Of a DNA stretch of 64,000 nucleotides, positions 3,600 to 51,779 are shown one piece after another. The stretch comes from Iphione sp. A-MEVVRFRX5 (lineage: Eukaryota), in assembly GCA_976226885.1 (NCBI GenBank), contig OZ320314.1:81592001-81656000 (forward strand). Reading direction: 5' to 3'. The notes under the pieces are model-generated. The model was not told the origin of the DNA, did not search any database, and saw only the letters and a program-made list of their open reading frames with translations. A program made the translations under genes and the position numbers. How positions within the stretch are numbered: the stretch's first letter is position 1; each line of letters begins with the position of its first letter.

Positions 3600-5590
3600 T
3601 TTCTTCTACTCTGACAGATACCTTCAAGAAGAAGACGCACTAGCTCTCTCCTCCAGATGATAGAGAACCACATCACGGAGGGATTGCAACTTAATGCGTT
3701 TAGAGCGGGTTCTTTTGCGATTGTAGATGTCCAGTAGCAGCATGGCCTGATGCTATCTTGCTTGTAAAGAGTAAGAAGATTGTTGTTCAACGCAAGTGGA
3801 TAACTTTGCACACAACGGAGAATGGATGCAGAGTGCAAGGGCAAGAGCCTCATCCTGTCTGACACAGAAAAATATGCCCGTCTCAACGCCTGCAGTTATC
3901 TATGTGTTACCTATGGCTGTCCCACCTATTTTGGCTGCACACGATCCATATATTTTTATAGGTTGAAAACAGAACTAACCCTTCTCATAGGATCAGTGGC
4001 ATGAGATCAACAGTAACATTATAATTGTAATGCCAAAAGGACAGAGAAACTAATATCAGTTGTTGTAGGGACAGCAGCCCGCCCCAGTTTTGGGAGGGAC
4101 TTCGACCTACCCATTAACGTGTATAATAGGCACGACAGAGAGGCATGAGTACTTTCTAGCGTATGCGAGGAGGTGCTCCAGATGCTAAAGGCAAGGGCCT
4201 AGAATTAGAGGAGAACGCTGATTGTGTACGACAATATACGACATTTCTCTAGGCTTAATATGCGTTCCTTCAACGCCCCCTACCCCCAGTGTGGAGAGAG
4301 ATGTTAGGAATATCACCTTGATGATCAAGGAAGCCTGAACGTCAGTCATCACAATCGGTATCACAACTGCTGAAGACATGTCCGTAGTCTGCCGTCTAAG
4401 GAGACATCAAATGAAGGGGACCGTCTGCTAAGTAAATTGGGCAGACAATTCTGTCGTGCTAATGAAACACAGCCAATGTAAGGAAGGATACCTGCATATT
4501 GATGGAATCTTACAGTTTTCCAAGCCCACAAGGATAGAGGTTAGCTGCATCAGAGGACCAGGAGAAGTAATTTGAAGAGGAGGAGCATGACAGACTTCAG
4601 TTACCCTGAAGTACTTCAGGTGGTGTGCGGCTTGCATGGACTCCTTCTTTGAAGACAGGGGAAAACGACGTGACAGTTATTAAGCAGGCTGAGACTGGGA
4701 CTTCAAAGACAAGCACTAAGAGGACCATGATAGGCTTCGTTTGGCCAGCGCGACAATTTAGTTTAAGTTCCAGATATACTTGCCAAAATCGCAATTGTTT
4801 TAATTATTGCAGTCATCCCTTGTTAAATCTCTAAGTTTTCCATCATTACCAGGCCACTGCATTACTGTTATAAGTTTTAGATATTATTGAAGCCACCCGT
4901 AAGGAATATCTGCTTCTTACTTCCAGATCATTCTATCAATATTATGGACTTTCATTCTTCTTTCACGCATCATCTTTGATCAATGAATGTCCTTCAATTT
5001 TTTTAAGAGATAGCATGTTTGTGAAGTTTATTTAACATAGTGAGGCAAAGTTCTCAACTTAGGCAATGTTTCCCCTGGAACTTTTGGAGTCAAGCTGAAA
5101 ATGTTCCAACTCGAACAGGATAAAGCTTAGTCTCAAGGCAATATTAAGGTCTTCCAACTTGAGAAAGAAGAATGGGGTCATGCCCTGAAAGAGAGGTGTT
5201 CATTGTTGCTAGTTTTGAAATTGATTATGTAATCTTCTAGTATATAAGGAGTCTCATTTTTTTCTGAATAAACAGATTCTCTCACTGCACCGGAAGAGAG
5301 TAACACTGAACAGCTTTTGTGTGGTTGTTCTTTAGTTTTCGATGACAGTGGCATCACATCAGGCTCATGTTATACTATCATTTATTGGCTATATACCCGT
5401 ATGACAGGGATTACTATAAAGTGTGACCCAGGAACGTTTAATGTTTCCCCTTCGCTCACCAGGACGCCCATGTGCGTTCTTATAGTGGCTTAAATGCCAA
5501 ATCCCATCTCTAGATAATTTGGTAGTAAAATGGAATCACCCGAAGCAGTGATTTCAGGACATAAGTGTTTACTCAAACAGACATGTACAA
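3600..5590 (-). mobile_element. Heavily degraded coding-like remnant, possibly the 3' part of an L1/Tx1-type LINE ORF2
   Basis: Stop-riddled minus-strand frames give fragments reminiscent of the post-RT region of L1/Tx1 ORF2: SEGETLNVP (~5450-5425; cf. GGLxVP), QWPGNDGKLRDLTRDD..LRFWQVYLEL (~4860-4770), a broken Cys/His knuckle DNCRR*DGHIFLC (~3900-3865) and MLLLDIYNRKRTRSKRIKLQSLRDVVLYHLEE (~3740-3645). No RT core motif seen, so the clade is tentative. Confidence 0.3.
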
Positions 5591-5809
5591 CTGACAGTGG
5601 AACCTCGTTTACCATACAACAGAGATAGTGGATAATACTAACTGCGGACATAACAACTAGAGATCTGTCTGAAAACCCTCTATTTGATATCTTATGTCTC
5701 CTAGACATAGCAGACTCTCGCCTATACTGGACACTCACCTCACATGATATGTTTTAAAGTACCAAACTAGCAATTTCTTAGGCTATTGTGGACGTAGCGT
5801 CTGTTGTCC

Positions 5810-6250
5810 TACTGTCTTGAGGATGGCGCGAATGACAGGCTGACAGGCGTTGATTGGAGGAGTGCTGGTACAGTGCCAGGCAATTCCTAACATCAGCTCA
5901 CACCTTAAGGATGGCGCAAATGACGGGCAGGAAGCACGGTAACCATGGATAGGAGGACTCTCGGGATAATGCCAGGCAATTCCTTAGGTCTGCTCACACC
6001 TGAGGACGACACGAAGGACAGGCCTGCAGGCGTGGATGTGAGGACTTCTCGGAGAATGCCTACCGCCGTCCTACTGTCCTTAACTCTGCTGACACCTGAG
6101 GATGGCACAAAAGACAGCCCTACAAGAGTGGCTGGGAGGACTGCCCAGGCAATGCCTACCGCAGTCCTACTGGCTTTAGTTCTGCTTACACCTGAAGACG
6201 GGCCACATGACAGGAATTGCAGGCCGACAGGAATGCGAGGAGGAGTCCCA
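5810..6250 (+). repeat. Tandem minisatellite, 96-bp (32-codon) unit, about 4-5 diverged copies
   Basis: Unit anchor (c/g/t)ACACCT(G/T)A(A/G) at 5899, 5995, 6091, 6187 (exact 96-bp spacing), plus a partial copy near 5815. Translates as LLTPEDDTKDRPAGVDVRTSRRMPTAVLLSLT / LLTPEDGTKDSPTRVAGRTAQAMPTAVLLALV. Confidence 0.9.
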
Positions 6251-6314
6251 GGACTGGGAGATACTACTGTCGCCTGCCACCATCCTACTACTATCAACAA
6301 CCGTCATTCCATCA

Positions 6315-7319
6315 CACACTCACCCAGGCAGGCTGCTGTAGAATGCAAAGTTGGAAATAGGACGGCAGACATCTTAGAGAAATATGAAAACTCCAATTCC
6401 AATGCTAAGAGAAGAGTGGGCCACCCTGCCCTGACTTCTTCAAGGTATCAAATTGATGGCTCTCCTAGCTCGAGGGTAAACACCACGTAAGAGGCATGAA
6501 GGTGTCTAGGAAGAAGGGTCAGTTCAAGAGGAGCAGGTTGGCGAGAGCTGGACACACTCCCACACCTCCTTGAATGCTACTAGTCAATTGAAATTTACAA
6601 CATGGATGAATTTGGACTGTTCTATGGAGCCCTTCCACACAAGCCCCTCTCCAAACTTCCAGTCATCTGGAAGGCTATTAAAGAGGCCTGGATGCCAATC
6701 CTTCTGTTTGAGGACTGACTAGCGCAGTTTAACAATAAATATAAATGCCAGAGACATCCTGTTGCCCTGCTGTTGTACAATGCCCCTATTCTTAGCCAAA
6801 ATGACATTAGGCTCAGCCATGTGAAAGTCATCTACCTGCAATCAAATTCCATCAATGTGCTATGGTCTCTGGATCAGAGGATCATTACATGTATGCCAGA
6901 TATGTACCAGAACTAACTCCTGTGGCATATGATCAGTCAGGCTGATGCAAAAAAGGATCCCATGACCATTGCCATATCAGTTGATATGCTGATGGTTATC
7001 AACTGGGTCAAGATTGCTACCAGACAGGCAAATTAGCACAGAGATGAAGAGATGCTTTTAGAAGCATTAGGTCAAACTGATGTCACCTTAGAACAGCTCA
7101 CCTGAGAACTTTGATGAAGGGGGAGGATGACCTTTCATTTGCTGGTTTGGTGAGGAGGGCTCAACAAGACCTGGGATTGAGTGATCCCTTCATTCCAGAG
7201 GAGTACTTTGATGTGGACTGCCCTGCCCACGATCCCATAGACAAGGACTGAGAAGACAGGATCTAAGCCAGTTGACAGAAGTAGAAGATGATGAAGAAGA
7301 AGAGGATGTCAAGGAGTAG
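6315..7319 (+). pseudogene. pogo/Tigger transposase remnant (CENP-B-type HTH + DDE_1), frameshifted
   Basis: SPRQAAVECKVGNRTADILEKYENSNSNAKR (psq-type HTH); FKVSN*WLS*LEGKHHVR at ~6439 (cf. FKASxGWLxxFKxRH); IYNMDEFGLFYGALPHKPL at ~6593 (cf. IFNMDETGLFYRALPDKTL); FNNKYKCQRHPVALLLYNAP..LSHVKVIYL..LDQRII (cf. VLLLLDNAPSH..LSNVKVIFLP..PLDQGII); acidic tail EVEDDEEEEDVKE*. Confidence 0.85.
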
Positions 7320-10300
7320 CCCATTACAGATCAAGAATTTACTGCAACCTAGCTAGAATGGGGGATAATTGTGCCATGAAAGGGTTATCAATAAGCATGG
7401 ATATTGCTCTCCACCTCGTCCAGTCATCCAGTGAGGAGACCACAAGGAATAAGATAAAAAAAATATACAAACCACCATCTCTACTATGCTCAAGAGATCA
7501 TGACCTGTTTCAATTTTCATGCTAGTTATTGTATTCATGATGTATATAGGATCTCTACTGTTATTTCCTCTTTGGTTAATTCCCCCGCTAACATAACCTG
7601 TTGATCAATTGTTTTTCGTATAGTAAAGTGTTTGAACTTTGATTATGGCTTGCTTTACTACAATAGTACTACATTTCAGCTACTGCGGACACCTCTTACT
7701 ACGCACAGAATGGTATCAGACCCTCTTCTATCTGCAGCTGCCAGGTTCCAATGTATATGATAAATGTTCTATGCTGCATTATTTTAGAATTTGCTGACCT
7801 TTTGGTACATTTTCATTTTAGGCCATTGCATTGCATGAATCCGAGATTCAAACTACAGTGCACACAGCAACTAAAGTATGCTCTCACATAAAGACCAGCT
7901 TTTAAGGCCACCTCCTAAATAAGACTTCGAAAGAACCACACGATTTCCTCTTATCGTCTGCAATTACCCTCATTAATAAAATTTTAGGACATCTCATCTT
8001 AAGCAAAGCAACATTTTTGCAAAACCCAAATGTTTTGAATCAATAATGAGAAACGGTAAACCCCCGTTTCTTTGTTGGAAAGAGAACAGGATGTGTGTTG
8101 GAGAATGTATGTAGGACTTTTTAGGCAAATTATCATACATCATTCAATGGCCTCTTCGCATAATGCAACAAATAACTATTAACACCCCGGTATGCGAATT
8201 CATTCCCAGTATATCTAACGTGAGTATTTCAACTCTATATTTCTTGTGGGAGAGAATGTGTATCGACTTACTGACCTAACTTATTGACATACATAGAATA
8301 TACAGCCCCCTACAAACAAGATCACCCCATAATTAATAAATCTGTTGGAAAGAGCAAAGAGTGGCTTCAATAACGATAGGATACTTTGCATGTACAGAGC
8401 ACGGATATTTTGTTGTATTGTTTTGAGCGATATGTAGAACATCCTTCTCTGTCCCAATCCTTACAACTCTAGAGTAAGTTAGAGAACGCAAAGATAAGTA
8501 GAGGTGAAGGATGAAGCCCTGATGTCATCTGTTTCTTTATCTTCGATCCCGATCTTTGAGAAGGAGCAACAGGCTTCACCCAAAGTGAACGGTTGTACCA
8601 AAGATGTGTGTCCCGGTTGCTAATCCCGCTTTTGTGTGCGACACTATTTGTAGCGTATTATACAAACCTGTATGTGTATTCCGGAAAGGTAGAGTGGTTA
8701 GTGGGTTCAGACTCATAACATGTGCCAGAAAACTCACCCTTACATTTGGATAATGGAGTCCGTGTACATATGTGTGTACATTTCTTGTTTCATACCATGT
8801 GTTTTTTGTTTCTGGTAATCAGTTACTGCAATGTCAGGAAAATCAGATGTAAGTGACAAATTACTTTCTCGTATTTAAAAGGGGGCAAAGACTATAATGC
8901 CTTCCTTACTCCGCATATTAGTTTGAGCAAGCAACAGCCAGTGGCTGTTGAATATACACCTCTCCCTGAAGTACCAACCTCTTGCTTATTCCTTGATCTC
9001 GACAAAGCGGATTAATCACTTACTTCTTGGCTCTGATAAGTATCTACTTCTGTCGCTACACTGTCGCCTGAGCGCTCGGCTCAGTGACCGCCTTGCAAGG
9101 AGCAGCAGCTGGCGCAATTAGCAGAAATCACCCACCCCATGCATCAGAGGTGGTGGTGGAGTATGGAGGTGGTGTGGGGGGACTGTTGGTGGGTGGTGGG
9201 ATGGTGCAGGGTTGGTGGGTCTCGGACGGGAGGGGGGGTGGGTTGCTGGGGGAGGGTGGCGTTGGAGCGGCTCGGTGGGCGCTGCGGGTGACGGCGCCCA
9301 CAGCTGGGGCCCCTGGCGCCCAAGACGCAGCGCCCACCCACAACCTCAGCGTGCGGCAGCTGCAGCACAGTGCCAGCGCATGGACAATGGGATCCGGCCG
9401 GCGTGGCGGATCGTTATGGCCCCAGCACTGCCTGCTGCGCCTGTGGATCATATATGATAGACGATGCTTACGCGCTGCTGAGATGGGAATCTCATCACCA
9501 TTACAATAAAGCACAACGAGGAGACTATCAACTAGTGTGCGGGGGGGGGGATGGTTAGAATGTATGAATTTGCTGTAAAGCAGCGGTAATGTATAGTGTG
9601 AGATGAATGCAAAAATAATTCGTAACTAAGCCATTCGATACATATTGCAGCGGCGCGAATATTGTATTTGTGTGGACTAAGACGTATAAATGCTGGGACT
9701 TCTATGGGACTTCGATGAGGACATTGAGGGGTGTGTCAGTGTATACTCTGATTCCTGCTTTGGCCTTTCTCTGTTTACCAATTTTACGACTACCTTTGGA
9801 GCCAATGATATGGAGAACATCTTCTTCCCTATCGAAACCACCTCCTTCCCGCTGTGTGACGGTTAGGAGGGGAAAATCACCAGGATGGAAAGAAAGATGC
9901 TTACTAAAAGAAGGTTTACTGAAACGTCGGGCAGGCTTTGGTGGAAAAGGCACGATCGAGCATAAGGGGAAACAGGGTGGCTGGGCGGGATCAGGTGGGG
10001 ATTAACATCGCATCGATGGGAGCTGTCATCTCATCCCTCTACCTTTACAGTATCGCTTCATATGGTATACATTTATCTCTGTGCAGTAGAAATTCAATAT
10101 GATGCTGGTTGAGGACAGGGCGCTGAGCGCACCTGTCAAACGCAAAACGGACGCGTGTACAGTCTTTTCAGAAATCTTTCTGTCCTGTAGAGAGATGCCT
10201 GCCACCCCCTCCCTTTTTCATACGCACGCACCCATCTAAGATATCAGTTGCACACCTAATTCCACTTTCTATGCATGCTTGAAGTGCAAGTAGCAATAAC

Positions 10301-27660: not shown

Positions 27661-28249
27661 CAGTGGAACCTCTGTCTACGGATGCCTGGCCACTGGGGAC
27701 AACCCCTACTAGGTCCAGACTAAAACTCTTCATTCCATGTTTAACATGGCCAAGCAACTGAGGATGCTGACTTCCAGTGTACACTCGCCTTTGGGTACTC
27801 CCATTACAGTCCCACAGGCTTATTTCACAGGCTTTACAATGGGCAGTGACCTCCTAGAGAGTCCAAACACCTGTCCTTAGACCTACCAACACCTCAGGAT
27901 GGTGTGAAGGATGGGCCAGGAGAGGTTGGGAGGGCCTGTGTGACAATGCCGGGCTACCAACACCTGAGGAAGGAGTGAGGGAGGGCTGGTTGTTTGGGGA
28001 GAACAGTCGCGGATACTGCCGCCCCTAGCTACAGATCTTCCAACAGTTGGAGGAAGGTGTGAGGGATGGGCCAGTGGTGATTGGAAGACCCTCATGGACA
28101 TTCCCGGCCACATACTCAGAGCTGCCAGCATCTGGGGAAGGTGTGAGGGATGTCTATACTTTGGTGCGAAGGAAGTAGAGGTGTATCTCGGCTACTATGG
28201 ACGCTTTGCCACCAGTCCCGCTGCTGTCTGCTGTAGGGATGTTTCACTG
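27661..28249 (+). mobile_element. Non-autonomous Tigger-like element A carrying ~84-bp LPTPEDG repeats
   Basis: TA at 27659-60, then CAGTGGAACCTC. Right end GATGTTTCACTG, then TA at 28250-51. Internal repeats at 27883, 27954, 28037, 28122 (LPTPQDGVKDGPGEVGR-like). Confidence 0.75.
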
Positions 28250-28251
28250 TA

Positions 28252-29053
28252 CAGTAGTAAGGTGGGGTTCACATGTATCTGTACAAAAAGCACGTCTACA
28301 GGTCCATATCCGTAGCAACCTCCTGCAGATTCATAAATTTAATTGCCCACACATGAATACCAAATGATTCTGCATCACTGATTCCTATGAAAAACGGATC
28401 TGTATCCACAGAAAATCCATCAGCGACAGATTCGGAAAACATCTATGTGTCCCTATCTGCTTTGAAAGTAGTAGTCCTATGGATGGTTAAAATCCGTCTT
28501 CGTGTCCATATCCATTTTGAAGAAATATGGATGTATGTGAACCCCGTCTAACCCCATACAGCGGACAATGAAGGGGCTTTTACCATTCTGTCCACAATAG
28601 GGAGTCTCTGAAGTAGCCAAAATGGAGTAAACATGTATTAATAGTGGCAGAAATGTAGTAAAATAAACCGAAAATGGAGCAAAAATGTAGTAACAATGGT
28701 AGAAATGCAGTAGAAACGTATCCACCCTGGTCCTCCCGACCTCTGCTATCCCAAACTTTACACCATTCTGAGGTGTAGGTAGATCTGAGGAGGTGGCCGG
28801 CACTGTCCCACTGGTAATACTGACTTCTCCCAGCCCTTCTGTCATACCTTTCTCAGGGTTCGGTAGATCTAAGGAGGTAGCTGGCAATGTCCCACTAGTC
28901 CTCCCGACTTCTCCCAGCCCTTCTGTTACACCTTCTTCATGTTGTGGTGTCCACTGTTCCCTACAAGAATCACTGTTTGCGTCTGTAAAATTGGTGTCCA
29001 CAGTTGGTTGTCTGCATGATGGCTGCAATAGTGGTTGCAGTCCTCGTTCACTC
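28252..29053 (-). mobile_element. Non-autonomous Tigger-like element B, inverted relative to A, interrupted by a Harbinger-like MITE
   Basis: Starts CAGTAG(TAA) directly after the shared TA and continues CCCCATACAGCGGACA after the MITE, resembling the 3' terminus of A. Carries 84-bp repeats on the minus strand (GGTAGATCT at 28778 and 28862; ORF 28477-29028). Ends GTTCACTC + TA at 29054-55. Confidence 0.65.
28261..28548. mobile_element. PIF/Harbinger-like MITE (288 bp)
   Basis: TIRs GGTGGGGTTCACAT / ATGTGAACCCCGTC with a 3-bp TSD TAA at 28258-60 and 28549-51. Confidence 0.8.
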
Positions 29054-30563
29054 TACCATGGAGTGATACATGATCGACACCTCTCCTTTTGTAAGTGTGC
29101 AGAACACAACGCCAAAAGAACAAGCACACATCTCAATGTCCCAACGGCCATCTCCTCAGTTGGTTGAACAGACCTCCAGATCATGTCTACTATCTGCATT
29201 GGAGACATCAGACTCATTCTGCAGCATGGAAGTGCAACACTTGCCAACTAAGGCAAGACAGCCAACAAGAAATCAGAGAACCTCCAGAACAGAGATCTCC
29301 CGGCCATACTCAGACTCCTTCAATGGAACAATGTAGATGCACCGCGACCTGAAACAAACATCCCGCCACTCAGCACCAGGCACAATGTTCTCACAGCAAA
29401 CCTTGCATTGAAAGTCACCCAAAATGCCAAACACGCTCCTCATTACAGGCTGAAAGATGTACTCACCACGAGTCACAGCATCAGGACATGGTCCTATCAG
29501 ACAGCTACCATCTTCAACCTACTACTCCTGCTGAAGCTCACCGCAAAGCAACTGGAAGAATTTGGCAAGAATCTCCAGCAGCAATATGCATCTTTAAACA
29601 CTGGCAGAAAAGAAATAAAGGCCCTTATTCAACCTATGATGCAGCCCTACAACACAGAGGAGAAAACCATGCAAGGAGATGTTCAGTACTACACTGACAA
29701 ATCTGTTATCCCAGAAGAATAAGCAGGCTGTGCCTTCTTCATCCCGCATGGAACCAAGGGATTCCAAGTCTTGGACCTTACATCCACACTCCATACAGAG
29801 CTAGCAGCTCAGGGCTCCGGCCACAGAAGGGTACTAGGGGTAGCCATCTATACTAACTCATCGGATGCCACACACAACCTACAGCATTACACACCTCAAA
29901 ACGGCAACCAGCTGATCGACCAGACACATCACACCATGCACGGAGACACCCAACATATATCAACTGGATCCCTAGCCCGGTGGCGATCCTCAGCACTGAG
30001 GCAACAAACAAAGCAACTAAATGTGGCACAAGGAAACCTCAAATTGACATTAACAATCTAAAAAAAACACAGATGAAATTCCAGATCAGAACGTAAGTTG
30101 TTGAACTATTAATTCTCCAGGTAACACAGACAAACGGTGCCAACTGCCTAAGAGAAGGCTCACAGACAGCAACACTCTGCAGACAGTTAAGACATTAATT
30201 TTGATGCTCAGAAAATGACCTCCCAAGAGATCAGATGAACAATATCTGCCTCAGATGTGCCCACCCAGTGAGCATCATGATTACCGACTACCCAGCCCTG
30301 AGAAAGGAAAGGCAGATACTCCCTGAGTACCGTGAAGAGGACATGTAACTAAAACAGACTAACTTGCACTCGATATCCTGCAAGCTTAATTAGATGTTAT
30401 GAGGGACTCGCTCCTATCCTACTGAAACACCCCGTGAAGAAATAGATCACGACAAGAGAACTCAGGGTTGTCGCTTCTGGAGAACAGGGCATTCGTGGGC
30501 CAACCTTTATGCGACCTGCAAATCACGAAGAAACGAACAATGGAAGATAGAAGCGAGAGTAAA

Positions 30564-50380: not shown

Positions 50381-51779
50381 ATGCCCAGACAGGAGCTGCC
50401 AATTGAAGAGAAGGTTTGGCTTATACAGTCCTCTATGGATTGGAGTCAACGGAGTCTTGCAGAGGAATTCAAATTGAAAAGACACCTCAAGCCAGATATT
50501 GTCCCAGTATGAAACGTGCAAATCCAGCAGCAAAAAGGCATTGCTTCTCCACTGACCTGACAACCTCAGACAACATGAGGTTCTACTGGTCCACTGTATG
50601 TAGTCCCTCAACCTCCTAGTGCCTGAGCGGATGATTCAGGAAAAAGCAGTGCTGTTCTCTAAAGAGCTGAATCCACCGGATTTCAAGGCATCTATGGGCT
50701 GGGTGAATCGATTCAAACAGTGACATGCAATTGCAGTCTGTGGAAAGAGTGGAGGCACATCGGACTAGTCTGTCAACAACTGACTTGACTGCCTCCCCGA
50801 GATGCTGAGCGGATACTCTACAGCCACAAACTTTAAAATGGATAAGACAGGCCTTTTCTATAGGAGTATGCCTGATAAGACCCATGCCAAGAAGGGAACC
50901 CATGCAGTAAAGAAATCCAAGGAGAGGATCACTCTGTCTCTGTGCTGTAACATGGAGACGGAGTTTGAAAAGGCTTGTCATTGCAAAGGCGCAGTGACCC
51001 AAGTGCCTTAGGCATGTTGACATATTTATCCTCCCTGTCACCTGGAAAGTCAGCTCTAGGGTCTGGATAACAGCCACAATCTTAAAGGAATGGCGGCACT
51101 CTTTCAACAAAAGAATGAGGAAGCAAAGAAGACGTGCTCCTATTGCCTGATAATGCACCCTCACACCCACTTGAAATCAAGCTGAGTCATGTGAAGATAA
51201 TCTACTCTACAAGAAACTTTTGAACTTCTCCCTCACCAATGCTGACTACAGTGATGGTCCCATAGACACTCAGGCACTGATGAAGTCAGTTGATCTGTAG
51301 AGGGTGGTCTACTGGCTGAAGAACTGAAATTAGCAGTTGAAGCCACAAACATTTCAGAAATGTTTCCACAAAGCAGGTGTGAATGTTCCTCAGCTGTGCA
51401 CTCAATTGTAGGAAGAAGAGGATGAAGATGACATCCCTCTTGATGAATTGGTCAGGAGGCTGCTTCCTGGAGAAGACCCATGTCTGTCAGATGATTATTG
51501 TGGATTTGATGATGAGCTACCAGCTCATCACCAGGACATTGACAGTGGTCTTATCCCTAAGAAAGATCCTTTAGAAGAAAAAGGGTATGAAGAAGACACA
51601 TGAGTGTCCCTTGAATCTCACATGCAGAGGCTATGGAGATAATGGAGACACAATAGAGACAAACCTTCTCCCAACATGGAATCAAAAGAAGCCTTGATCC
51701 TCTGATGATCTCCATAAATAACTTTGGAAAGCACATTCAGCAGGCCATGAAGAGGCAACCCATAATGGACACTTCTTAG
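50381..51779 (+). pseudogene. pogo/Tigger transposase remnant (near full length, many stops/frameshifts)
   Basis: ATG at 50381: MPRQELPIEEKVWLIQ..SQRSLAEEFKL (psq HTH); QEKAVLFSKEL..DFKASMGWVNRFKQ*H (HTH_Tnp_Tc5); FKMDKTGLFYRSMPDKT..KKSKERITLSLCCNM; FNKRMRKQRR..LLLPDNAPSHP..LSHVKII (DDE_1); acidic EEEDEDDIPL and terminal KRQPIMDTS*. Confidence 0.92.

What the first reader, a model, noticed from the sequence alone, without database searches (positions are those of the whole stretch)
5595..7753. pogo/Tigger transposon family carrying a codon-multiple 'LPTPEDG' minisatellite, in frame with the transposase HTH
Seen: the same repeat core (ACACCTGAGGATGG...GGGAGGAC; L-P/L-T-P-E/Q-D-G...G-R-T) occurs in three Tigger-type elements: 5810-6250 (96-bp unit), 27883-28150 (~84 bp, +) and 28720-28940 (84 bp, -). 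The clean unit lengths are multiples of 3. In the long element the repeats run without a stop into SPRQAAVECKVGNRTADILEKYENSNSNAKR (ORF 5945-6490, 181 aa), which resembles the psq/CENP-B N-terminal HTH of pogo transposases. In element B they lie in a 183-codon ORF. Known: pogo transposases normally start about 20 residues before this HTH, as the copy at 50381 does. Inference: an ancestral element may have encoded a transposase with an N-terminal Pro/Gly/acidic tandem-repeat extension, or the family spreads a minisatellite in its 5' region. I do not know of this architecture being described, but cannot check.
Basis: partly seen in the sequence, partly recalled or inferred. Interest (0 to 1): 0.7.

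Follow-up and report, generated by a model that had tools for sequence, protein, structure and literature searches.

The report
Non-coding minisatellite inside Tigger transposons
An old, broken Tigger/pogo jumping gene and its short derivatives carry an 84-96-base tandem repeat in front of the transposase gene; the repeat is real and spreads with the element, but it is not protein-coding, so the finding is an ordinary transposon-borne minisatellite.

Summary
The repeats are real. Window 5595-7753 is a decayed, internally deleted Tigger-like (pogo) element with about five 96-bp units at 5795-6254. A profile built from them finds homologous units at 27874-28102 (+), 28729-28942 (-) and in at least 10 other loci of the same genome, mostly next to this family's 5' terminus.

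The coding reading fails every test I could run:
- pN/pS in the 'LLTPEDG' frame is 0.77, against 0.71-0.97 in the five control frames. The transposase part of the same copy gives 0.37.
- Unit periods vary (64, 65, 74, 83, 85, 86 as well as 84 and 96), and neighbouring units change frame.
- The one copy that keeps both array and start codon (L054) has the canonical ATGCCTG start. The array is out of frame with it and ends in TGA 7 nt upstream.
- Intact sister elements (525-531 aa) start at MPEKR, which aligns with CENP-B residue 3. They read their own stop-free 5' repeats in at least three different frames.
- The array is GC/CpG-rich like the sister family's 5' region, unlike the CpG-poor ORF.

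Best reading: a non-coding 5' minisatellite, probably promoter or leader DNA, spread by autonomous and MITE-like copies. The scan has already noted similar 5' repeat arrays in pogo elements elsewhere in this genome. Interest is low.

The parts
5595..5605 (+). 5' terminal inverted repeat of element A (CAGTGGAACCT); the flanking dinucleotide is GA, probably a mutated TA
   Evidence: matches the reverse complement of 7743-7753 at 10 of 11 positions; same TIR as element B
5606..5794 (+). 5' subterminal non-coding region of element A
   Evidence: homologous 5'-terminal stretches lie next to arrays in other genomic copies (L056, L060, L061, L062); one search shows shared motifs with the sister family's 5' end
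5795..6254 (+). Minisatellite, about five units (spacing 87, 96, 96, 96 bp); GC 0.56, CpG o/e 0.51
6265..6319 (+). Remnant of the 21-bp-type 5' repeat, and the place where the canonical ATG region has been lost (gap of about 40 nt against L054, L029 and L023)
   Evidence: alignment A1
6320..6442 (+). Remnant of the CENP-B_N-type helix-turn-helix (roughly residues 24-70 of the intact transposase), with a 21-nt internal deletion
   Evidence: Pfam CENP-B_N and PDB 1HLV matches of the intact homologue
6548..7462 (+). DDE_1 catalytic domain and acidic C-terminal remnants in frames 2, 1, 3, 2, with stops; the Tc5 HTH domain is deleted
   Evidence: tblastn with L029 transposase residues 149-515, E 1e-54
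7743..7753 (-). 3' terminal inverted repeat of element A, followed by TA
27661..28249 (+). Element B: complete 589-bp non-autonomous (MITE-like) member with TA on both sides. It carries decayed units at 27874-27948 and 28032-28102 and no transposase
   Evidence: (I6)
28252..29055 (-). Element C: transposase-less, 5'-truncated or decayed member. Its 84-bp array lies at 28729-28962, followed by AT-decayed short repeats. Its 191-codon open run (29052 to 28480) continues into a foreign MITE
28264..28546 (.). Unrelated MITE inserted into element C (TIR GGGGTTCACATGTA)
   Evidence: I4
50490..51549 (+). Another decayed Tigger-like transposase remnant in the window, without the 84-bp array
   Evidence: tblastn 8e-27 and 2e-16

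Best explanation
The 84-96-bp repeat is a non-coding minisatellite. It lies between the 5' TIR and the transposase start codon of an old subfamily of Tigger-like (pogo) DNA transposons.

It is copied around the genome whenever an autonomous or short non-autonomous (MITE-like) member transposes. It then expands, contracts and decays locally by slippage or unequal exchange.

The long open frame is a by-product of three things. The unit has one forward frame without a stop. Several arrays happen to have periods divisible by three. In copy A, deletions removed the true ATG region and happened to leave the array in phase with the HTH remnant.

By analogy with intact sister elements, the array most likely belongs to the element's GC/CpG-rich promoter or 5' leader. 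This last step is inferred, not shown.
For: Shown:
1. Family membership and position. A's fragments match an intact own-genome transposase (tblastn 1e-54) that carries DDE_1 (2.6e-43), HTH_Tnp_Tc5 and CENP-B_N. Arrays sit about 200-220 bp inside the 5' TIR in A, B, L052 and L054. In L054, L055 and L056 they lie upstream of transposase remnants in the same orientation.
2. No coding constraint. pN/pS over 37 units is 0.77 in the ORF frame against 0.71-0.97 in the five controls. Among A's own units it is 0.94. The same measure on A's DDE pieces against L029, at equal divergence (29-33%), gives 0.37 against 0.82-1.37 (and 0.48 in the mirror frame). Three-base periodicity of column variability is not significant. 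The variable columns are C/T or G/A next to G or C, which is CpG decay.
3. Periods. TRF gives 83 and 65 (L057), 84 (L059, C) and 96 (A). Unit spacings range from 64 to 129 bp.
4. Frame. Successive units are read in different frames in L054 and L057.
5. Start codon. L054 keeps ATGCCTG, homologous to the MPEKR start of intact copies. The array frame is phase 2 relative to it and ends in TGA 7 nt upstream. The ATG frame has only 28 open codons upstream and crosses several stops in the array.
6. N-terminus. Residues 3-126 of the intact transposase align with residues 3-130 of the CENP-B DNA-binding domain, 1HLV. The DNA-binding domain therefore starts at the N-terminus.
7. Sister-family analogue. 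There, 21-bp x7 repeats lie directly upstream of the ATG and are always stop-free. Different intact copies read them as CRCRRTF, AAALQSA, AAVLPSA or LPLPSYL, mostly with no upstream Met.
8. Composition. The sister family's 5' region has CpG o/e 0.63-0.92 against 0.04-0.09 in the ORF. A's array has 0.51 against 0.18 in the rest of A.
9. Chance open frames. C's 191-codon open frame runs into a foreign MITE. Complete transposase-less copies (B, L062) carry the array.
Against: - The LLTPEDG frame is the open one in most copies: 188, 184, 181, 191, 121 and 111 codons. In A this exceeds dinucleotide shuffles (P about 0.001), although shuffling destroys the tandem structure.
- The majority-rule unit carries an ATG in that frame. 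Translation from within an array is therefore physically possible if the array is transcribed.
- pN/pS in the ORF frame and in its mirror frame are the two lowest of six (0.77 and 0.71). This is the direction expected of a faint coding signal, though it is not significant.
- Only one decayed copy (L054) retains both array and ATG, so the ancestral phase is not securely known.
- The promoter or leader function is inferred only from position and CpG content.
Confidence: 0.85

Rival explanations
1. One reading: the ancestral active element encoded a transposase with a variable-length N-terminal Pro/Gly/acidic tandem-repeat extension. Translation would start at the ATG inside a repeat unit and run in frame into the HTH.
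For: - Stop-free frame of 188 codons from the array into the HTH remnant in A.
- The same frame is open in several other copies.
- There is an in-frame ATG in the majority-rule unit.
- The clean arrays in A and C have periods 96 and 84.
Against: - pN/pS is indistinguishable from the control frames, while the transposase control gives 0.37.
- There is no significant third-position periodicity.
- Periods of 83, 65, 85, 86 and 74 occur in other copies.
- Frame shifts occur between adjacent units.
- In L054 the canonical ATG lies downstream and out of frame, with TGA before it.
- A's continuity depends on deletions that removed the ATG region.
- The CENP-B-type DNA-binding domain begins at residue 3 in intact relatives.
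- The array's CpG content resembles the 5' non-coding region, not the ORF.
- No protein family or Atlas match to the repeat peptide was found, which is weak negative evidence.
Confidence: 0.04
2. The units are functional subterminal repeats that bind the transposase (extra binding sites that promote synapsis or transposition), as in CACTA, P or IR/DR-type elements, rather than passive or promoter DNA.
For: - The position is constant just inside the 5' TIR in autonomous and non-autonomous members.
- The array is retained in short MITE-like copies that kept little else (B, L062).
Against: - The 12-nt TIR core is not enriched in the 84-bp units: mean best match 6.97 of 12 against 7.19 in shuffles.
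- A has no array at its 3' end.
- The conserved half of the unit is simply the CpG-free half.
- The unit shows no similarity to the sister family's 63-bp unit.
- No binding data exist.
Confidence: 0.1
3. The resemblance among the three arrays and the long ORFs is chance, with no real shared feature.
For: - blastn of A against B and C finds nothing at E<=1e-3.
- Pairwise local scores for A-B and A-C are modest.
Against: - Profile hits range from E 1e-15 to 2e-8 in B and C and in more than 10 further loci.
- B-C local score is 68 against 19 +/- 2.3 in shuffles.
- The position relative to the shared TIR is consistent.
Confidence: 0.01

Closest known systems
Tigger family of the pogo superfamily (IS630-Tc1-mariner group); typical structure described in PMC9219625 and PMC7386202
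   Same: TA target duplication, short TIRs beginning CAG, and a single ORF of about 525-531 aa in intact relatives, with CENP-B_N, HTH_Tnp_Tc5 and DDE_1 domains. The second and third catalytic Asp are 30 residues apart (my count on the L029 sequence printed).
   Different: PMC9219625 describes Tigger as about 2.8 kb with about 20-bp TIRs and does not mention tandem repeats (0 occurrences of 'tandem'). The elements here have long, repeat-built 5' regions: 84/96-bp arrays in the old subfamily, and 17-, 12-, 63- and 21-bp arrays in the intact one. I did not place the family in a phylogeny, so 'Tigger' rather than another pogo clade rests on domain content only.
Tandem-repeat-containing MITEs and DNA transposons that seed mini- or satellite DNA (e.g. 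DTC84 of Donax trunculus and pearl of oysters, PMC3879986; review PMC6947457)
   Same: Short TIR- and TSD-bounded non-autonomous elements with an internal array of up to a few units (B, L062). The same unit is also found in long arrays at other loci, up to about 1.1 kb, with period 84 or 168 by hit offsets.
   Different: Here the autonomous parent type can be recognised (pogo/Tigger). The array sits in the 5' region between the TIR and the transposase ATG rather than in a central module next to a microsatellite.
Intact pogo elements of this same genome with repeat-built, CpG-rich 5' regions (earlier scan notes s1-325191 and s1-323595)
   Same: Tandem repeats lie in front of the transposase gene. 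The 5' region is CpG-rich and the ORF CpG-poor; I reproduced this on L011, L023, L024 and L029.
   Different: Element A belongs to an older subfamily, about 67-74% identical in DNA, with a different and longer unit (84/96 bp) that shows no similarity to the 63-bp unit. All its copies that I examined are decayed.

Membership tests
pogo/Tigger DNA transposon | DDE_1 (DDD) catalytic domain | tested here: met
   A's pieces alone give no Pfam hit. They do align with residues 149-515 of an intact own-genome transposase (tblastn 1e-54), which matches Pfam DDE_1 at 2.6e-43. The motifs NMDEFGLFY, LLLYNAP and SLDQRII are visible.
pogo/Tigger DNA transposon | N-terminal CENP-B_N (psq-type) HTH plus Tc5-type HTH | tested here: inconclusive
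   In A only a partial CENP-B_N remnant survives (6320-6442), recognised by DNA alignment. The Tc5 domain is deleted. The related copy L054 has HTH_Tnp_Tc5 at 7.7e-6, and intact relatives have both domains and match 1HLV at 1.6e-12.
pogo/Tigger DNA transposon | Short TIRs and TA target-site duplication | tested here: met
   TIR CAGTGGAACCT is present at both ends of A. A has TA at its 3' flank and GA at its 5' flank. B has TA on both sides. The sister family shows TA|CAGGATAACC.
Tandem-repeat-containing non-autonomous DNA transposon (MITE-like) | TIR- and TSD-bounded short element without coding capacity, holding an internal tandem array | tested here: met
   B is 27661-28249 (589 bp, TIRs 87% complementary, TA flanks, no transposase match). 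L062 spans about 3744-4415 with TIRs and three units.
Protein-coding tandem repeat (N-terminal extension of the transposase) | Excess of synonymous over non-synonymous change in the proposed frame, relative to other frames | tested here: not met
   pN/pS is 0.77 against 0.71-0.97 in controls. The positive control on the transposase part gives 0.37. The periodicity test gives P=0.13, or 0.36 corrected.
Protein-coding tandem repeat (N-terminal extension of the transposase) | Unit length a multiple of three and frame kept across units and copies | tested here: not met
   Periods of 83 and 65 (L057) and spacings of 64, 65, 74, 85 and 86 occur. Frame switches occur between adjacent units in L054 and L057.
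Protein-coding tandem repeat (N-terminal extension of the transposase) | Continuity of the repeat frame with the transposase frame in copies that keep the start region | tested here: not met
   In L054 the array is in phase 2 relative to the canonical ATG (L054:4394, minus strand), with TGA 7 nt before the ATG. Only one such copy was available.
Protein-coding tandem repeat (N-terminal extension of the transposase) | Expression of the repeat-HTH junction as RNA or protein | not testable with these tools
   The look-up of sequencing runs listed no run.

The most novel reading that the evidence does not exclude
In the active ancestor of the 84-bp subfamily the array may have been transcribed. Because each unit holds an ATG in a stop-free frame, translation would then have started inside it. 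That would give either a transposase with a copy-number-variable, disordered N-terminal extension or a regulatory upstream ORF whose length tracks array size. The present copies are too decayed for the weak phase signal (0.77 and 0.71, the lowest two of six frames) to be told from noise.
Probability: 0.04. Interest if true: 0.6.

Novelty: new member of a known kind. Interest (0 to 1): 0.2.

Why it matters
As it stands, the finding is a clean example of two things. A transposon-borne minisatellite can mimic a long ORF fused to a real domain. A pogo/Tigger lineage can disperse tandem-repeat seeds, through autonomous and MITE-like copies, that grow into kilobase arrays elsewhere. Its practical use is for annotation: stop-free frames upstream of pogo transposases in this genome should not be called as N-terminal extensions.

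The more interesting biology lies in the young sister families. They have many intact copies, with a CpG-rich repeat-built 5' region set against a nearly CpG-free ORF. Other findings of this scan already cover that.

Tried and rejected
- Pfam on the eight stop-free pieces of A gave no relevant hit. I used intact transposases from the same genome as the reference instead.
- NCBIfam and the ESM Atlas gave nothing for the repeat peptide.
- I tested whether the 84-bp unit is related to the sister family's 63-bp unit. It shows no similarity above shuffles.
They do not.
- I tested whether the sister family's 5' region is depleted of ATG, as a long 5' UTR might be. It is not depleted overall; only the last 230-290 nt, the 21-bp repeats, are ATG-free.
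- Multiples of three: by my hand count from the coordinates, about 15 of 27 unit spacings are divisible by 3. The spacings within one array are not independent and the profile boundaries are approximate, so I give this no weight.
- The shuffle test of ORF length (P about 0.001) is not a valid null, because shuffling destroys the tandem structure. With about 4% stop probability per codon, a 32-codon unit is open in a given frame about 27% of the time, and once open it stays open along an array whose period is a multiple of 3.
- Transcript evidence: no sequencing run was listed.
No family-wide reconstruction was possible. I built only a majority-rule 78-column repeat unit, not a consensus of the element or of the transposase.
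- The large protein searches (search for homologous proteins, the search of protein representatives) were not run, because the conclusion does not rest on absence of relatives.
Full report
**What is there**

Window 5595-7753 is bounded by the inverted 11-mer CAGTGGAACCT, with TA after the 3' end and GA before the 5' end. Its translated pieces are too short and decayed for Pfam. They do match open frames in other loci of the same genome. Four of those loci hold intact 525-531-aa ORFs. For L029 and L023, Pfam finds DDE_1 (about 2.5e-43), HTH_Tnp_Tc5 (about 2e-18 to 2e-19) and, below the cut-off, CENP-B_N.

tblastn with one of these transposases (L029:808-2391) hits the window at 6548-7462, residues 149-515, E 1e-54, in four frame pieces. 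It also hits a second remnant at 50490-51549. Residues 3-126 of that protein align with residues 3-130 of the CENP-B DNA-binding domain, PDB 1HLV (1.6e-12).

Element A is therefore a decayed Tigger-like (pogo) element. It has lost about the first 23 codons, 7 codons inside the first HTH, the whole Tc5 HTH and part of the DDE domain.

**The repeats**

TRF reports a 96-bp array at 5982-6201 and an 84-bp array at 28760-28934. A profile seeded with three units of A and iterated over the window and the fetched loci recovers several sets of units:
- five units in A (5817-6254);
- two in the plus-strand element (27874-27948, E 1.3e-15; 28032-28102, E 4e-4);
- three in the minus-strand element (28729-28942, E 1e-12 to 2e-8);
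- units in L004, L048, L050, L052 and L054-L062.

The majority-rule unit reads NSLDLLTPEDGAKDGPAGIGRTAGTM in one forward frame. The other two forward frames each hold a stop.

**Where the repeats sit**

In A, B, L052 and L054 the array starts 200-220 bp inside the 5' TIR. In L050, L056, L060, L061 and L062 it lies next to sequence homologous to A's 5' terminus. In L054, L055 and L056 it lies upstream of transposase remnants in the same orientation.

B (27661-28249) and L062 (about 3744-4415) are complete short elements with both TIRs, an array and no transposase.

A genome search with B's 5' part returns 78 matches. Some are runs of overlapping hits whose offsets imply periods of 84 or 168 bp, in arrays of 0.7-1.1 kb: C19:2228751-2229871, C4:93739628-93740636 and C10:2195534-2196222. 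Several arrays have the TIR nearby.

The family therefore carries a minisatellite in its 5' region and spreads it.

**Is it coding?**

Five lines of evidence say no.

1. Substitution pattern. Across 37 aligned units, pN/pS in the LLTPEDG frame is 0.77. The five control frames give 0.71-0.97. Among A's own units it is 0.94. As a positive control I applied the same calculation to three ungapped pieces of A's DDE and C-terminal region against L029, at the same divergence (29-33%). It gave 0.37 in the true frame and 0.82-1.37 in the others, with 0.48 in the mirror frame. The method therefore detects old constraint even in this decayed copy. Column variability is slightly higher at phase 2, but not significantly (P 0.13, or 0.36 after allowing for three phases). 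The variable columns are C/T or G/A next to G or C, which is CpG decay.

2. Period and phase. TRF gives periods of 83 and 65 in L057 as well as 84 in L059. Unit spacings run from 64 to 129 bp. In L054 and L057 neighbouring units are read in different frames of the same stop-free run...CSHL... beside ...LLTP....

3. The start codon. L054 keeps ATGCCTGGACAAAG..., which is homologous to the ATGCCTGAAAAAAGG (MPEKRVMLSL...) start of the intact family. In that frame only 28 codons are open upstream, and the frame crosses several stops in the array. The LLTP frame is in phase 2 and ends in TGA 7 nt before the ATG. In A the ATG region is missing: there is a gap of about 40 nt against L054, L029 and L023, plus a 21-nt gap in the HTH.

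4. A natural control. The intact sister family carries its own arrays between TIR and ATG: 17-, 12- and 63-bp arrays and, directly before the ATG, seven 21-bp units. The frame of the ATG is open for 50-164 codons upstream in every copy. Different intact copies read the repeat as CRCRRTF, AAALQSA, AAVLPSA or LPLPSYL, and most have no upstream Met. The genome-wide search shows the same thing on a larger scale, with open frames of 580-680 aa around 528-aa matches. Stop-free repeats in front of a pogo ATG are thus common here and are not translated as a conserved peptide.

5. Composition. In intact copies the 5' region has CpG o/e 0.63-0.92, against 0.04-0.09 in the ORF. In A the array has 0.51, against 0.18 for the rest of the element. 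The array therefore groups with the non-coding 5' region.

In addition, the 191-codon open run of the minus-strand element continues into a foreign MITE inserted at about 28264-28546. That shows how easily such frames arise by chance.

**Why the ORF looks impressive**

It is the third-longest stop-free run in the window, and the run over the minus-strand array is the second-longest. It also exceeds dinucleotide shuffles (P about 0.001). Shuffling destroys the tandem structure, however. With T at 19%, a 32-codon unit is open in a given frame about a quarter of the time. Any array with a period divisible by three then inherits that openness. The adjoining 21-bp-type remnant is stop-poor, and the HTH piece is former coding sequence. 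The only coincidence needed is the phase, which has a chance of 1 in 3.

**Mechanism**

Shown:
- The array is part of the element.
- It is non-coding by every test available.
- It travels with autonomous and non-autonomous copies.
- It varies in unit number and length between copies.

Inferred:
- It belongs to a GC/CpG-rich promoter or leader, by position and by composition shared with the intact sister family.

A role as extra transposase-binding sites is possible but has no support here. The TIR core is not enriched in the units, there is no array at A's 3' end, and the conserved half of the unit is simply the half without CpG.

**Comparison with what is known**

Tigger elements are described as about 2.8 kb, with about 20-bp TIRs, a TA duplication and one ORF. 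The survey PMC9219625 does not mention tandem repeats. DNA transposons and MITEs with internal tandem arrays that seed satellite-like DNA are well documented (PMC3879986, PMC6947457). Two earlier notes of this scan describe repeat-built 5' regions in intact pogo elements of this same genome. I reproduced the CpG contrast on my own loci. For the 84-bp unit I did not find the TIR word that one of those notes reports.

**Limits**

No family-wide reconstruction was made.
- No sequencing run was listed, so nothing can be said about transcripts.
- I did not identify the organism. The clade within pogo rests on domain content only.

**Verdict**

The minisatellite-spreading reading is supported. The N-terminal-extension reading is not supported. 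This is a new member of a known kind, of low interest.

Noticed in passing
Own genome, e.g. G000:C11:24188100-24189683, C4:31877656-31879242, C15:2975849-2977441 (L029, L011, L023, L024 among fetched loci): Many intact Tigger-like transposase ORFs in three identity tiers relative to L029: at least 25 stop-free full-length matches at 93-100% aa identity, at least 12 at about 73%, and at least 15 at 52-54%. The first look gave 5602 candidates. This suggests several recently active pogo lineages in this animal genome.
   Followed up: partly
L011, L023, L024, L029 (5' region against ORF): The 5' repeat-built region has CpG o/e 0.63-0.92 and GC 0.56-0.60, while the transposase ORF has CpG o/e 0.04-0.09. 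The last 230-290 nt before the ATG (the 21-bp repeats) hold no ATG, whereas each 63-bp unit upstream does.
   Followed up: partly
L029:2539-2700, L013:2586-2753, L014:2604-2726 and others: The intact sister family also has a 63-bp tandem repeat (2-3 units) just downstream of the transposase stop codon. Its 3' TIR lies beyond the 3.6-kb loci, so the element is longer than about 3.6 kb, which is long for a Tigger.
   Followed up: no
window 28252-29055 with 28264-28546: Elements B and C abut tail to tail across a single TA (28250-28251). C holds a foreign MITE with TIR GGGGTTCACATGTA. Whether B and C are two insertions or one composite with long inverted arms was not resolved.
   Followed up: partly
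G000:C19:2228751-2229871, C4:93739628-93740636, C10:2195534-2196222: Runs of overlapping matches to the B-type unit imply arrays of 0.7-1.1 kb, with an 84-bp period and a 168-bp higher-order period. These would be local expansion of the transposon-borne unit. They could not be fetched.
   Followed up: no
window overall: CpG o/e of the whole 64-kb window is 0.66 at GC 0.42, higher than is typical of mammalian DNA. The organism was not identified.
   Followed up: no
L057:3369-3649: An AT-rich 67-bp tandem repeat (4.3 copies) lies directly upstream of the 83-bp array in this copy. Its relation to the element is unknown.
   Followed up: no
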